Shown: positions 35,901-60,484 of the stretch, in pieces
Numbering within the stretch: the first letter of the stretch is position 1
Layout of the letters: every line of letters begins with the position of its first letter
Assembly (NCBI GenBank): GCA_964035545.1
Contig: OZ037766.1
Coordinates: 32,416,773 to 32,480,772, forward strand
Direction: 5' to 3'
From: Bugula neritina
Taxonomy: Eukaryota; Animalia; Bryozoa
DNA: 64,000 nt
Translations under genes and position numbers: made by a program
The notes under the pieces: model-generated
Database searches by the model: none
The model's input: the letters and a program-made list of their open reading frames with translations, nothing else
Told to the model about the DNA's origin: nothing

Positions 35901-38900
35901 CTCAACACCGTGCTTAACTGGAAGGATGAGGTCATCAAGTGGACGGAGAATCTGGAGATAGACATCGACGTGAGTCGGTTATGTTATTAGTTTGATCATG
36001 TGGTTTAGGTGCGGCCATATTTGTTTACCATTATTGTGACTTTTTTGGCGTATTATTTGGGCTACCTTATCAACTTGAATAACCAGTGTCTTGTTACGCA
36101 TCAGTTTTACAATGTTACTTAATATTGATATACAGTATGTATATTGTATAATATTATATGACAATGTCTCCTACAATGTATATTGTATAATATTATATGA
36201 CAATATCTCCTACAATGTATATTGTATAATATTATATCTCAATATCTCCTACAATGTATATTGTATAATATTATATGACAATATCTCCTACAATGTATAT
36301 TGTATAATATTATATGACAATATCTCCTACAATGTATATTGTATAATATTATATGACAATATCTCCTACAATGTATATTGTATAATATTATATCTCAATA
36401 TCTCCTACAATGTATATTGTATAATATAATATGACAATATCTCCTACAATGTATATTGTATAATATTATATGACAATATCTCCTACAATGTATATTGTAT
36501 AATATTATATGACAATATCTCCTACAATGTATATTGTATAATATTATATCTCAATATCTCCTACAATGTATATTGTATAATATTATATGACAATATCTCC
36601 TACAATGTATATTGTATAATATTATATGACAATATCTCCTACAATGTATATTGTATAATATTATATCTCAATATCTCCTACAATGTATATTGTATAATAT
36701 AATATGACAATATCTCCTACAATGTATATTGTATAATATTATATGACAATATCTCCTACAATGTATATTGTATAATATTATATCTCAATATCTCCTACAA
36801 TGTATATTGTATAATATAATATGACAATATCTCCTACAATGTATATTGTATAATATTATATCTCAATATCTCCTACAATGTATATTGTATAATATTATAT
36901 GACAATATCTCCTACAATGTATATTGTATAATATAATATGACAATATCTCCTACAATGTATATTGTTTAATATTATATGACAATATCTCCTACAATGTAT
37001 ATTGTATAATATTATATCTCAATATCTCCTACAATGTATATTGTATAATATTATATAATTATCTGATATAATATTACTCTATCACTGCCCATAATCTACT
37101 CTATTATTCTAAGAGTTGCCTCCTCAAAGTAGGAAACTGTGTCAAGATATCCTCCAATCACGTCTCAGCTATTTGCCAGGTGGACGAGCTGCAGGCCAAT
37201 AAGAAGAATGTTGACAGACTGCACAGACTGCAGAGGTGGTACTCCACAGGGGGCATCATGATTATCGGCTACGAGATGTTCCGCAACCTCACGCAGGGCA
37301 AACACGTCAAGAAGGCGGCTCATAGGGACAAGTTTACAGAGTACCTGCTCAAACCAGGTACTTACCTCTATTCACCCCTGCTTACTTACCTCTATATAGT
37401 GTATGTTTACCTCTACATACTTACCTTTATGTACCTCTGTATACTTACCTCTGTGTTCTTACCTCTATATACCCACTTCTCTGTATGTTCACCCCTCTAC
37501 ACTCTTCTCTCTGCATACTTACCTCTCTACACTTACTTCACTCACACAGACATTTAGTTTATATTTGTGTATCTCTACGACGCAGGGCCCGACCTCGTTG
37601 TCTGTGATGAAGGTCATCTGTTGAAGAACTCAAAGTCCAATATCCGCAAATCTGTGATGCGAATAGAGAGCAAGAGGAGGGTGGTGTTGACTGGCACCCC
37701 GCTACAGAACAATCTCAAGGAATGTAGGTTATTCTATTCTATCTGGTTATACGAGTGAAACTAAACACTAATTCACAGACTGCTACTTCTGATATACTAA
37801 TGTTTACTTCTGGAGAGTTGGTGTCTAAATTATGTCACAAGATTTTTTATTTTAATGCGAAAATCCCAAAATATGTTGTAATCCAATTGAAATCCAATTG
37901 TATACTTTGAGTCTTGTTGACGAATAGAGACCTTTAATTATCACATATCGTATTTGTCTCCCCTCGCTTCACCCCATTTCTGTCCTTGGCTAGCCTCAGC
38001 TCTTACTGTGCTTACAGACCACTGTATGGTGGACTTTGTGAAGCCCAATCTGCTGGGAACAGAGTCTGAGTTCAACAACAGGTTCATAGCTCCCATCACC
38101 AACGGCCAGTACGAAGATTCTACGCCTTTCGACGTCAAACTGATGAAGAAACGGGCGCATGTCCTGCATGAGATGCTGGCCGGGTGTGTGCAGGTACAGT
38201 ATCAGTTCTATGTAGATGTGTACAGGTACAGTATCAGCGCTATGTAGATCTGTACAGGTACAGTATCAGTACTATGTAGATGTGTACAGGTACAGTATCA
38301 GTGCTATGTAGATCTGTACAGGTACGGTATCAGTGCTATGTAGATGTGTGCAGGTACAGTATCAGTGCTATGTAGATGTGTGCAGGTACAGTATCAGTGC
38401 TATGTAGATCTGTATAGGTACAGTATCAGTACTATGTAGATGTGTACAGGTACAGTATCAGTTCTATGTAGATGTGTGCAGGTACAGTATCAGTACTATG
38501 TAGATGTGTGCAGGTACAGTATCAGTGCTATATAGATGTGTGCAAGTATAGTATCAGTGCTATGTAGATGTGTGCAGGTACATTATTAGTGCTATGTAGA
38601 TGTGTGGAGAGGCAATGGCAGCTCTACTTTGTGTATTACAGAGGAAAGATTACTCCGCACTGATTAAATTTTTACCTCCGAAATACGAATACATTTTGGG
38701 TGTGAAGTTGGGAGAACTACAAGTAAAACTGTACCAGCGATATCTGGACATGTTAAAAGGAGACAAATTAGGTGAGAGTTATCAGTTCACTTCTCCCTGT
38801 AGCTTATGGGCTGTCTGCAGTAATACAAACTTGTGTTTGTTTTTAACCCTTCTTAGATAACAACTACTCTCTTTTTAACAATAATTAGTATATCCACAAC

Positions 38901-56494: not shown

Positions 56495-59400
56495 CTAACT
56501 GCAATTATTATTAGCTTGTGACTCAATTTTTTCAGAAATAGATTGAATATGTCTTATCACTTCACAAATCTTTGGATGATTGTCATCATCACACGCAGCG
56601 AGAAACTTTCTTTCACTCTCTTGGAAACATTCGAGTGCTTTATCATAATGATGGAGTGATTCAAACATGCAGCCCATCATTTGAAGAATTTCGCCTCGCT
56701 CTAAATCAGCAGATTTAGGAGTTGCCCTATCAACATGAACGAGAAGCTCTAGTGATTCACGATAGTATGCTTTAGCTTGCTCAATGTTGCCAGATTTCCA
56801 GTAATTTAGAGCAAGATGTGACAGCGTGTTTGACACGTAGCCGTAAGGAAAATGGCAATTTCCTTCATCAGCACTCTTTCGGTATGTTTCTAGGGATAAT
56901 TTTAGTGTTTTTTCTGCAAGGCAATGTTCCCCGATATGAAGGAGATGCAAACCGTAGCGACTCGCAACTGTGGCAGACTGAGAATGAGCCACTTTGAAAC
57001 GAGGCAGCTCAAAGAAAATCTTTACCACTAGTTTGTGATATTTCTTCAAGTCTATCTTTGCTAAGCAGTGCAACGCAGCTGATGGAAGTCCTTTATTTTT
57101 GCCAAATGCTTGAATTGCCATGCTAAGACCACCGTGGAAGTACTCTTCTGTCTGTGCATGGTGACCAAGCAAAGTGCTAATGCTGCCCAAGGCGTACAGT
57201 AACTGTGAGATATCTTTATGACACGCTTCACTTCCGTATCTTTCATAAAACATCTCTCTACTTTTGTCAAAGTAAAGAAACGCGAGGTTGTAGTACTTAG
57301 TGAACATGTAGTTTAGTCCAAGAGCCCATAGGATGTGCGCAAGAATGATAGAAGAGTTGTTGAGATATTTTAGCCTCTCTTCGGGAGATTTCTCACGCAG
57401 ATTCACCAGGGAGTGGTCAGTTTCCTTTGTATAAATAACTTCACCATAGTAGTTGAATTCAACTTCTTTAGAGGTTTCATTAAAACAGATTTGTAGAGCT
57501 TCAAATAAATGATCCCGGGCTTTTTGGTATTCAAACATCATGTTGTAAGACTTTCCAATGCGGTGGTGTGTTTTAGCCAAATGTTCATAGTTGTTTGACA
57601 GCAGTGTGTTTTGAATTCGAAGAGAGAGTTTGAACTCCTTCAGGGCTGAGGTGTAGTCGGTGAGGCCATAATAGCAGGAGCCTGACTCTGTTTTTGACTC
57701 AGCAAGAACTAAGTTTCTTTCTTGATAGTCTTCCAACTCTGCACCAGATTCAGCCATGTGTTGGATATGCAAATGATAGGCTAGGGCTTCCTTGTACTTC
57801 CTTTCTTGACACAACGAGTACGTCAAAGCCTTGACACAATTCCAAAGCTCATCAAAACTATGATTCACCATGCTGTGAATCGTGCTAATGGTTTGCTCTG
57901 GTTGCTCAAGCAGATTCTTTGTATTGATGTGTTTTTGAAGCAGACCCTGGCTCTTAGACCATCGGTTGCAAGAGTGAAATATTTGAAACTTTACTAGCCA
58001 GTTAACCTGTTGAACTTGCTCCTTCAAAAGAAACTCAATACTTTCAACTTGGCATGCACTAATGTGCTTCTTTAGTGGAACCAAGTATTCACAATGTAGG
58101 TTAAAGAGTTTTTGTGAAAGAAACCATCGTTTACCAGAGTCGCACTCTGGTTGAAAAAATGGCCGGTTCTTAGAATGGCTGAAAAGATTTATAGGCAGTA
58201 CAGAAAGTCTGTTTTCAGCTGAATCATAAAACGTGTAAGTTGAAAGCCGAAGGTAGCAAGCACAAGACAATAAAAACAAAATACTTTTGTGCACTGAGCT
58301 AGATATATAATTCTGTTGTCTCAAACAGTCTAAACTCTGCCAGGAATTTGTTTCTGACAAGTTGAATATGATCAGAATGTTGTAAAGCAATATTGAAGGG
58401 TATCGGTATAAATCCTTTTTGGTATTTATCGAAAAGCCATTGCTTATAGTGTGTTCTGTGGGTCTGAAGCCGTACTTCTTTGAGTCGGCAAAAAACATGT
58501 TTCTGTTTGCTTTTTGTCGCTCTTCATTAAGTGGTAGGCGGTTCTTCTCCTCTACAAACTGATCCAAGAAGTGCTCAGCGCCTTCTCCATTGGAATACAG
58601 AAGCTTAGTGAACTGCAACTTAGCGGTGAAGTCTCCTCTGACAGCATCTTCATTAGGGTTATCCAAAACGTCTCTGTACTTTTGAATAAGTTCTGCTGGG
58701 GTAAGAATAAGGTGGTTGAGCTGTGAAGGGGATCCATTGCCAGTTGGAATATTTCCTGCTCCCTCTTTCAGCCCATCTATTTTGAAGCCACTCTTCTGCT
58801 TATCTTCAAACCAGCCTTTCAGTTCTGCAATTGACATGTAACCTAGTTCAGTTTCCTTCAGGTTCCCAATGATGAAATAACCTAAAACGGCAAGCTTTTC
58901 AAAATATGCAACGGTTTCTGGAGATTTGTGCTGAATTAGAAAGAGATACTCTAAATCGGAGTATGGAGTTGTCTCTCCTTTTGCTAAAGAGCCAAACGCC
59001 ACCGTGCAGAACGCACAAGGAGGGTTAGTAGTTAAACTAGCGACGCTCAACATAAATACTTTTTTTGCAAATGACACAACTTTATCTGAGCAACTTATTG
59101 AAACTTCCTTGATGCTTGTCACAAACTTTTCAACAAATGCATCATCTGTGATCTCGTTTGCATCAAACCGCTTGACAATCTTGTGGGTTTTTTTAATTTG
59201 TGCTTTTGTGTCTTGTCTGACTTTTTCCAAGTCATCTACCAACTGCCGTGTGATAGAGTGTTGAGTCTCGAAGTCCCATGCCCCAATATCTTGCAAGTAA
59301 AGAGCTTGTCTCTCAAACGCTTTTCGCTCCCAAACCTCCGCCATCTCAGGATTGCGTTTTGACACAGCAGTGCACAAAGCGTGGCTCTACAAACATCAAA

Positions 59401-60484
59401 AGTTAATTTTAGGCTTCTTGCATATACAATATTAACTCTGAGTGTAATATATATAACACATAAGTATGCATTTACCCGTATTGCTAAAACCACCCAGTTT
59501 TAACTTTATATAGAAATGTGTTTTCACGAATTTAATAAAAATGTCTTCGTAAGATTTAGCAACTTATTATTTGCAGTTTAGTAATTTCAAAGTAGACCAA
59601 ATAAGTCTTTAAATTGCGTAGGTGCAAATTAACCTGGACCTAGCCAACTCTGAATAACTAACACGCAATAGTTTTCTAATGTAGTGATAAGCTATTGTGG
59701 TGAATAACACTTCTTCATACCCTCAGAATATCTGCCCAGTTGCCGGTTTCCTCATACTTGGCTAAGTATTCTTCAGCCAGCTCCCCTAGGTATGGAACTG
59801 GAACTGATAAGTTGTACTTTCCACCTGGGGCTAGGGAATAGGATACCTTAAAATCCTTCAATCTTTCAGGAGTTATCTGTTCAAAAATTATATGTTATGT
59901 AGTATACTATATATTACGCAGTATATAATATCATATGTTATGTAGTATATTATGTATTATGTAGTATCTATAATATTATATGTTATGTAGGTATATTATA
60001 TATTATGTAGTATAATATCATATGTTATATAGTATGTTATATATTATGTTATATATCATTTATTATGGTTATTATAATAATATATAGTTTAAGCTTTTCA
60101 AGCTCACATCTCTTATGAGTGTGAGGTGCTTTTTTGAGTTTTACAATAATATAGGAGCAGTATTAGAATGAATGCCCCAATTTACGTGCTTAGATGCATA
60201 TATTTACTAACCCTAGCATAAACTACTATAGCCTAGCTGTGAGCCATATTATATTTAATGTAATTGTCCTTCACCCACTTTACCACCAAGTTATAAATAT
60301 ATAATTTAAACTTCTCAATGAATAACTCAAAAAAATTTTGATACAAAGAAACAATGCAGCAAAGCCTTATCTATTAATAATAATAAACTATGCTTGTATT
60401 CAAGTAAAAATCTCTCTGTCAGCTATCTAAAGCTATTTAAGCTGCCTTAATATTCCCACTCACCACGTAATCTTCCATGATCAT
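56495..60484 (-). CDS. ~1022-aa Pol-beta-superfamily (GlnD/GlnE/DUF294-like) nucleotidyltransferase fused to a C-terminal TPR solenoid
   Basis: Exons 60464-60484 (MIMEDYV, with an in-frame stop upstream), 59721-59876 (ITPERL...YLGELAEEYLAKYEETGNWADILR) and 56495-59386 (2892 nt) are all phase 0 with GT-AG boundaries. The NTase signature FCTVAFGSLAKGETTPYSDLEYLFLI (hG[GS]x10DhE) lies at 58949-58993. Kinesin-light-chain-like TPRs include LAKTHHRIGKSYNMMFEYQKARDHLFEALQI and VSNTLSHLALNYWKSGNIEQAKAYYRESLEL. Confidence 0.85.
59888..60050. repeat. Degenerate AT-rich minisatellite (TATATTATGTAG)
   Basis: Imperfect tandem units in intron 1 of the NTase-TPR gene. Confidence 0.7.

What the first reader, a model, noticed from the sequence alone, without database searches (positions are those of the whole stretch)
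56495..60484. Animal nucleotidyltransferase-TPR fusion: candidate sensor-coupled NMPylase or second-messenger synthase
Seen in sequence: an intact ~1022-aa ORF with an N-terminal helical hairpin, a complete Pol-beta NTase catalytic signature (GS-x10-DLE at 58949-58993) and a plausible third acidic residue in GFKIDG. A helical region (KKDLYRYP...YLRLSTY) sits where GlnD/GlnE/DUF294 enzymes have their substrate-binding helical bundle, and about 8 degenerate TPRs follow. There is no signal peptide or TM segment. Established knowledge: GlnE/GlnD AMPylate/UMPylate proteins, cGAS/OAS/CD-NTases of the same fold make immune second messengers, and TPR arrays act as ligand sensors (IFITs, NLR-like proteins). 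This architecture matches none of the canonical animal NTases (PAP, TUT, CCA-adding enzyme, cGAS/Mab21, OAS, FAM46). Inference: a cytosolic sensor(TPR)-effector(NTase) protein of invertebrate innate immunity or host-symbiont conflict, with unknown substrate.
Basis: partly seen in the sequence, partly recalled or inferred. Interest (0 to 1): 0.88.

Follow-up and report, generated by a model that had tools for sequence, protein, structure and literature searches.

The report
Animal DrrA-like protein-tagging enzyme family
A marine invertebrate, most likely a bryozoan, expresses this gene, one of about 60 copies, which joins a binding arm to an enzyme shaped like the Legionella effector that attaches AMP to host proteins; if active, it would be a third, undescribed class of animal AMP-tagging enzymes.

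Summary
The gene is real. It has three exons, not one ORF; both splice joins appear in contigs of a probable RNA run, and paralogues favour a start giving 1020 aa. The enzyme domain folds confidently (pLDDT 94). It matches Legionella DrrA/SidM (Z 19.8) and GlnE (Z 17-18), not cGAS, cGLR or CD-NTases (Z 3.6 or less). The DrrA catalytic triad appears kept (D141, E143, D201); DrrA's D249 is not. About eight TPRs follow. The genome holds about 64 loci, 56 with an intact enzyme domain. Relatives are Watersipora, a large Branchiostoma expansion, and bacteria whose named families are intracellular (Rickettsiaceae, Holosporaceae, Amoebophilaceae, Chlamydiae). The DUF294+TPR layout is already published for Neochlamydia; I found no paper on the animal family. 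Best reading: a cytosolic protein NMPylase, probably an AMPylase, whose TPRs select the target (0.55). A second-messenger synthase is unlikely. A diversifying sensor is unsupported in this subfamily: no positive selection, TPR dN/dS 0.15-0.25. Activity and substrate are untested. This scan noted the same family earlier on other DNA of this genome (s1-456718, s1-456761).

The parts
60464..60484 (-). Exon 1, coding part (two in-frame ATGs, 60484 and 60478; the second matches paralogue starts), phase-0 GT donor at 60463
   Evidence: joint 59876/60464 with GT-AG ends in run X1
59721..59876 (-). Exon 2, 52 codons, N-terminal region of unknown role, no Pfam match
   Evidence: joints; 43-62% identical in 15 paralogues, 94% in L054, and matches Watersipora P0008 residues 15-63
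56495..59386 (-). Exon 3, 963 codons plus stop, carrying the enzyme and all TPRs
   Evidence: covered by contigs of four probable RNA runs from four studies
59162..59377 (-). N-terminal helical hairpin (aa 1-72 of the 960-aa ORF)
   Evidence: AlphaFold model, helices 10-31 and 36-72
58178..59149 (-). DrrA/GlnE-type nucleotidyltransferase: catalytic lobe plus helical bundle (aa 77-400)
   Evidence: Pfam DUF294; profile hit to 6yx5_B, E 2.6e-8 and 7e-12; fold Z 19.8 over 256 residues
58949..58993 (-). Signature G129-S130-x10-D141-L-E143, aligned to DrrA G98-S99...D110-x-D112
   Evidence: 96-97% conserved in 157 domains
58775..58777 (-). D201, likely third metal ligand (DrrA D150 equivalent; inferred from position and conservation)
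   Evidence: D in 123/127 bryozoan-side, 38/38 bacterial and all amphioxus domains tested
58226..58525 (-). Helical bundle (aa 285-384) with conserved D298, K320, R325 and R377; S328 stands where DrrA has D249
   Evidence: alignment to DrrA; residue counts; DrrA C-part 3l0i Z 5.6
56501..57856 (-). TPR solenoid (aa 508-959): eight helix pairs, one degenerate pair and a capping helix

Best explanation
A cytosolic protein nucleotidyltransferase of the DrrA/GlnE type, most likely an AMPylase. Inferred steps: (1) D141, E143 and D201 bind Mg2+, and K320, R325 and R377 of the helical bundle hold the NTP; (2) the TPR solenoid binds a protein partner and presents it, or switches the enzyme on when it binds; (3) NMP is transferred to a Tyr, Ser or Thr hydroxyl and changes the partner's activity. 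Paralogues keep one catalytic module and vary the TPR arm in number and sequence, which would give each copy its own target. The most likely setting is conflict with intracellular microbes or cell-level self-recognition (about 0.55 given this chemistry). Shown: gene structure, transcription, fold class, conserved residues, copy number and purifying selection. Not shown: activity, nucleotide, substrate or biological role.
For: DrrA is the best PDB hit by sequence profile, with both halves matched (E 2.6e-8; 7e-12). Pfam SidM_N matches 90 of 136 family members. By fold, DrrA scores Z 19.8 and the two GlnE domains 17.8 and 17.4; after a DrrA fragment (8.5) the next unrelated entry scores 6.4. Foldseek gives the same four top hits. 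All of these top hits add NMP to, or remove it from, proteins (PMC7815794, PMC12409994). Catalytic residues are 96-97% conserved and the domain is under purifying selection, dN/dS 0.12-0.23. TPRs set target specificity in the animal AMPylase FICD (PMC8065156, title). For a conflict role: tandem clusters with 7 broken loci and open frames of 861-2267 codons; every bacterial hit named to family is intracellular; an NB-ARC fusion in one bacterium (L062); CARD fusions in two Branchiostoma species.
Against: No activity was measured, and a shared fold does not fix the substrate. Identity to DrrA is only 12-15%. DrrA's D249, reported to bind metal (PMC8097203), is S or T in all 127 bryozoan-side domains. 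Predicted bacterial CBS-DUF294 proteins, whose function I did not establish, are structurally as close as DrrA (TM 0.72-0.75 against 0.60, different tools). The GlnE removase domain matches nearly as well as DrrA. No positive selection was found in this subfamily's TPRs (p 0.87-1.0).
Confidence: 0.55

Rival explanations
1. The enzyme runs the reverse reaction. Like the removase domain of GlnE, it strips NMP from proteins, for example host proteins tagged by symbiont effectors.
For: GlnE's N-terminal removase domain (1v4a) scores Z 17.8, close to DrrA and level with the transferase domain 3k7d. The animal lineages share a change at the D249 position that most bacterial relatives lack (D in 26/38).
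Against: The sequence profile finds DrrA and not GlnE. No cognate tagged substrate is known.
Confidence: 0.1
2. NMP is transferred to a non-protein acceptor (RNA or tRNA end, or a small molecule), with the TPRs binding RNA as in IFITs.
For: The superfamily includes antibiotic, tRNA and RNA NTases. Aminoglycoside NTases are the next structural tier (Z 6.0-6.4). IFIT5 is among many TPR matches.
Against: These matches lie far below DrrA and GlnE. TUT, PAP and GLD-2 folds score Z 3.6 or less. The TPR hits are generic and mostly peptide-binding.
Confidence: 0.12
3. A sensor-coupled second-messenger synthase like cGAS, cGLR, OAS or CD-NTase.
For: Same superfamily. A Mab21-plus-TPR layout exists in oysters (PMC8195603). 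A sensor-effector layout and lineage-specific expansion fit immunity.
Against: cGLR Z 3.4, DncV 3.6, CdnE 3.3 or less, MAB21L1 2.9, against 19.8 for DrrA. No Mab21 or SMODS Pfam match in any of 136 members. The C-terminal bundle is of the DrrA/GlnE kind.
Confidence: 0.08
4. Most copies are scaffolds, or serve a developmental or housekeeping role, and catalysis or conflict is incidental.
For: This subfamily is under ordinary purifying selection, and TPR helix A is less variable than helix B (p 0.016). An orthologous exon structure is kept, and the N-terminal exon is shared with Watersipora. One sampled orthologue lacks 13 residues just before the GS motif.
Against: Catalytic residues are near-invariant across more than 150 domains. 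The distribution found is patchy (bryozoans, amphioxus, endosymbionts), and birth and death of copies is ongoing.
Confidence: 0.14
5. Bacterial contamination or a recent symbiont insertion.
For: The closest non-animal relatives are endosymbiont proteins, and the main exon has no introns.
Against: Two spliceosomal introns are spliced out and sit at the same places in paralogues. The gene lies on a 33.6 Mb contig among host genes. About 64 loci lie on nine contigs. The bryozoan-side sequences form one long-stemmed group with 100/100 support.
Confidence: 0.01

Closest known systems
Legionella DrrA/SidM AMPylase domain (PDB 6YX5; Pfam SidM_N PF20879)
   Same: Whole two-lobed fold (Z 19.8, 256 residues aligned), G-S-x10-D-x-[DE] signature with near-identical local sequence, likely third Asp, and the K241, R246 and R303 equivalents
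   Different: 12-15% identity; E rather than D at the second acid; D249 replaced by Ser; no GEF or P4M domain; TPR arm instead; encoded by an animal, with introns; substrate unknown
E. coli GlnE (GS-ATase) AT and AR domains; GlnD
   Same: Fold (Z 17.4-17.8), three-acid active site, helical bundle after the catalytic lobe
   Different: Single domain with TPRs; no regulatory R, ACT or HD domains; no profile-level sequence hit
Neochlamydia NEX2 family (Domman et al. 2014, PMC4209131)
   Same: DUF294 followed by C-terminal TPRs; lineage-specific expansion of about 50 genes; direct homologue (tblastn E 4e-22, 11 places on one record)
   Different: Bacterial putative effectors with an N-terminal F-box and sometimes OTU; function untested; His at the D249 position in the chlamydia-like P0142
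Branchiostoma proteins annotated 'Protein-PII uridylyltransferase N-terminal domain-containing' or 'TTC28'
   Same: Same enzyme plus TPR layout in an animal; very large expansion (951 hits, nearly all of the best 120 from Branchiostoma)
   Different: Separate branch of the tree; some carry tandem enzyme modules or CARD-fn3; database names are automatic, and I found no paper on them
FICD/HYPE
   Same: Animal AMPylase whose TPRs select the target: a functional analogue
   Different: Unrelated Fic fold, ER membrane-anchored, a single gene in most animals
cGAS/cGLR/Mab21, OAS, CD-NTases
   Same: Pol-beta superfamily signature
   Different: Different C-terminal lobe; Z 3.6 or less

Membership tests
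Pol-beta NTase, GlnD/GlnE/DUF294/DrrA branch | hG[GS]x9-13Dh[DE]h signature | tested here: met
   G129-S130-x10-D141-L-E143
Pol-beta NTase, GlnD/GlnE/DUF294/DrrA branch | Catalytic lobe followed by the GlnE/DUF294_C-type helical bundle | tested here: met
   Z 17-20 over the whole domain to DrrA and GlnE; TM 0.72-0.75 to DUF294+DUF294_C models
Pol-beta NTase, GlnD/GlnE/DUF294/DrrA branch | Pfam DUF294 above gathering score | tested here: met
   25.7 and 27.4 bits against 21
DrrA/SidM | Acid triad D110, D112, D150 | tested here: inconclusive
   D141 and E143 align directly with D110 and D112.
DrrA/SidM | D249 metal ligand | tested here: not met
   S328; S or T in 127/127 bryozoan-side domains
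DrrA/SidM | GEF and P4M domains; Pfam SidM_N above cut-off | tested here: not met
   No such domains, and no SidM_N hit for this protein itself; 90/136 relatives hit it weakly
DrrA/SidM | AMPylation of Rab1 Tyr77 | not testable with these tools
   Needs biochemistry
Neochlamydia NEX2 | DUF294 plus C-terminal TPRs | tested here: met
Neochlamydia NEX2 | N-terminal F-box (most members) | tested here: not met
   No F-box in exon 2 or exon 3
cGAS/cGLR/CD-NTase | Mab21/SMODS-type fold | tested here: not met
   Z 3.6 or less; no Pfam match in 136 members
Canonical animal NTases (PAP, TUT, CCA-adding, OAS, FAM46) | Family-specific fold and accessory domains | tested here: not met
   TUT4, TUT7, GLD-2 and TRAMP score Z 2.8-3.6; no matching Pfam. 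CCA-adding, OAS and FAM46 were not among the listed rows.
Diversifying immune receptor family | Positive selection on the ligand-binding repeats | tested here: not met
   M2a against M1a p 0.87-1.0 for this subfamily. A weak signal appears in the distant C6 cluster only (p 0.012 uncorrected, about 1% of sites).

The most novel reading that the evidence does not exclude
Bryozoans and amphioxus took up a host-directed AMPylating effector of endosymbiotic bacteria and expanded it into a cytosolic recognise-and-tag defence system of tens to hundreds of genes. It would be a third class of animal AMPylase, and in the papers searched the only DrrA/GlnE-fold protein-modifying enzyme encoded by animals, acting on microbial proteins or on host switches such as small GTPases.
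Probability: 0.35. Interest if true: 0.86.

Novelty: new variant of a known kind. Interest (0 to 1): 0.7.

Why it matters
Recent reviews name only two metazoan AMPylases, FICD and SelO, note that many AMPylated eukaryotic proteins have no known writer, and expect more enzymes to be found (PMC8097203, PMC12409994). This family is a concrete and testable candidate of a different fold. It also ties DrrA, a well-studied Legionella effector, to a broad family shared by Rickettsiales, Holosporales, Amoebophilaceae and Chlamydiae, which suggests a function for the Neochlamydia NEX2 proteins. It offers a case of likely gene exchange between endosymbionts and animals followed by large expansions. It is not a new kind of chemistry or a new domain layout, and nothing here suggests a vertebrate member.

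Tried and rejected
A single-sequence PDB search found only Csm2 at E about 0.01, a chance helical match. The viral contig scan found no relative. PADLOC gave only weak motif-level hits. Nine literature searches found the DUF294+TPR layout only for Neochlamydia; the HEPN survey lists DrrA, GlnD/E and DUF294_C as bacterial. Positive selection was tested by NG86 and by my own codon site models (M1a against M2a, fixed tree, scaled branch lengths, recombination ignored): nothing in the C5 cluster, the C2 cluster or all 15 close sequences. The NG86 means for the C2 cluster are distorted by saturated pairs and were not used. The direction of gene transfer could not be shown: the tree has no outgroup, and animal monophyly is neither recovered nor rejected (AU p 0.49). 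The careful 87-row tree did not finish. Exons were searched and folded separately by reference, and the joined spliced protein was left out, so the models lack the first 60 residues. Cluster look-ups gave no organism names for most metagenome hits.

Full report
Observation. The minus strand holds a stop-free frame of 963 codons, 59386-56495. Residue numbers below follow the 960-aa ORF; add 60 for the likely full protein. Contigs of run X1, which the tool guesses to be RNA, show both joints with GT-AG ends. Contigs from four runs of four studies lie on exon 3, and of the two introns only X1 covers parts. These contigs differ from the window by about 2-5%, so they come from other populations or a sibling species; they show presence, not level. 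Exon 2 is conserved in 15 paralogues and in Watersipora. Twelve of those paralogues have a first exon starting M-[ED]-[ED], so the ATG at 60478 and a length of 1020 aa are more likely. All motifs are at the stated places. Pfam gives DUF294 above cut-off and several TPR models. No segment is hydrophobic enough for a membrane anchor. Exons were searched separately; the joined protein was not built.

Organism. It is not given. The only named close homologues are from the bryozoan Watersipora subatra, and one unnamed homologue comes from a sample labelled BRYA. I infer a bryozoan. The genome is 216 Mb.

Fold. AlphaFold models of the enzyme domain (pLDDT 94.3) and of exon 3 (93.2) are confident. 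Against 48,161 representative chains the domain matches DrrA at Z 19.8 (256 residues, rmsd 3.9) and the GlnE domains at 17.8 and 17.4. A DrrA fragment follows at 8.5 and aminoglycoside NTases at 6.0-6.4; cGLR, DncV, CdnE, MAB21L1, TUT4/7 and GLD-2 all score 3.6 or less. Foldseek gives the same four top hits. Profiles of homologues find DrrA by sequence alone, in both lobes (E 2.6e-8; 7e-12), and Pfam SidM_N matches 90 of 136 members. In the ESM Atlas the nearest models are a mostly chordate DUF294+TPR cluster (TM 0.88) and bacterial DUF294 proteins (TM 0.72-0.75). The C-terminal half is a TPR solenoid of about eight repeats with only generic matches.

Active site. With the residue numbers of PMC7815794, G129, S130, D141 and E143 align with DrrA G98, S99, D110 and D112. 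K320, R325 and R377 align with K241, R246 and R303 (chain offset 12, fixed on G98 and D110). D201 is near-invariant and lies just before the second aligned stretch; I infer that it is the D150 equivalent, but no alignment spans it. All these residues are at least 96% conserved in 157 domains. One difference is systematic: the position of DrrA D249, a reported metal ligand (PMC8097203), is D in 26 of 38 bacterial relatives but S or T in all 127 bryozoan-side domains and never D in the amphioxus ones tested. A separate Asp, D298, is kept in 126 of 127. So the protein works plausibly like DrrA but is not a DrrA.

Family in this genome. The search gives 67 matches, about 64 loci on nine contigs. 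Of these, 56 have a stop-free enzyme domain, 53 of them in open frames of 861-2267 codons; 7 loci are broken and one is a fragment (counts are lower bounds). They lie in tandem clusters. This gene is the first of six loci over about 80 kb, the rest lying beyond the window's right end. A long member examined owes its length to more TPRs.

Selection. Against its orthologue in L054, dN/dS is 0.19 for the enzyme and 0.15 for the TPRs. Among 15 close sequences the TPRs are less conserved than the enzyme (51% against 64% identity; dN/dS 0.165 against 0.12), but site models find no positive selection (p 0.87-1.0). Helix A, which in canonical TPRs lines the groove, is less variable than helix B. Only the distant C6 cluster gives a weak signal (p 0.012 uncorrected, one site, first 897 codons only).

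Distribution. Branchiostoma carries a very large expansion, automatically named 'PII uridylyltransferase N-terminal domain' or 'TTC28'. Some members have tandem enzyme modules, and two have CARD-fn3 in front, one with an intact motif. A scan of 185,579 prokaryotic genomes with one motif gave 44 loci. Every one named to family is an intracellular lineage: Rickettsiaceae, Holosporaceae, Amoebophilaceae, Rhabdochlamydiaceae and Parachlamydiaceae. The rest are MAGs of unstated lifestyle; the motif biases this scan. The six tested carry TPRs after the enzyme, and one has NB-ARC between them. Neochlamydia has 11 matches on one record, the NEX2 family of Domman et al. 2014. No viral relative was found. 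In a 32-row tree the bryozoan-side and amphioxus groups each have 100/100 support. One animal origin is not rejected (AU p 0.49), and there is no root, so transfer from symbionts is an inference from patchy distribution and the single large exon.

Mechanism. The closest solved relatives all act on proteins, the catalytic residues are kept under purifying selection, and a TPR arm is the targeting device of FICD. A protein NMPylase, probably using ATP, is the best reading (0.55). Rivals are a scaffold or non-conflict role (0.14), a non-protein acceptor (0.12), a removase (0.10), a second-messenger synthase (0.08) and contamination (0.01). A role in conflict is suggested by birth and death of copies, shared use by endosymbionts, and CARD and NB-ARC fusions, but nothing here shows induction or a target.

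Novelty. The domain class and the DUF294+TPR layout are known, the latter from one paper on Neochlamydia with no function tested. In nine searches of the held literature I found no description of the animal families or of their link to DrrA, and reviews list only FICD and SelO as metazoan AMPylases; subscription papers are mostly not covered. I class it as a new variant of a known kind. I reached the DrrA reading (noted) before consulting earlier scan notes. Note s1-456718 says the same about another cluster of this genome and is not independent support. Interest 0.70.

Noticed in passing
L054:2407-5259: The orthologue from another sample (94% identical) lacks 13 residues (aa 115-127, the strand before the GS motif) in frame. 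This is a possible null allele or an assembly error; the X1 contig over this place has no gap.
   Followed up: partly
window:60497: An out-of-frame ATG just upstream of both in-frame starts opens a short frame that overlaps them and would end a few codons into exon 2: a possible regulatory upstream ORF.
   Followed up: no
L062:5305-12918: A protein of an unnamed gammaproteobacterium with the order NTase, NB-ARC, TPR: an NLR-like layout with this enzyme at the effector position. The same genome has several related loci.
   Followed up: partly
L102:203-14541: A run of three large genes: double NTase-TPR, TIR plus NB-ARC, and F-box plus TPR.
   Followed up: partly
P0339, P0346 (Branchiostoma): CARD-fn3 fused in front of the NTase-TPR module in two species; the GS motif pattern was found in P0346 but not in P0339.
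   Followed up: partly
window:53715-54080 (-): A small ORF with a signal-peptide-like start and a weak PAN/apple domain match (E 6e-4), 2.4 kb downstream of the gene.
   Followed up: partly
window:27500-40000 (+): Exon-like pieces of a large gene with acidic low-complexity stretches. A piece at 37180 looks like an ATRX-type SNF2 helicase motif from memory; Pfam gave no hit on the short piece.
   Followed up: no
window:50476-50823 (+): An ORF piece that looks like a sulfatase C-terminus from memory; no Pfam hit.
   Followed up: no
window:10500-41400: Many intronic-looking minisatellites with units of 14, 19, 20, 25, 30, 32 and 39 bases.
   Followed up: no
window:61133-61194: A short element upstream of exon 1 matched by many unrelated contigs at high depth, probably a dispersed repeat.
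   Followed up: no
ESM Atlas row 2: A cluster of short DUF294 proteins, mostly eukaryotic and commonest in ciliates, matches the catalytic lobe: a possible further eukaryotic branch.
   Followed up: no
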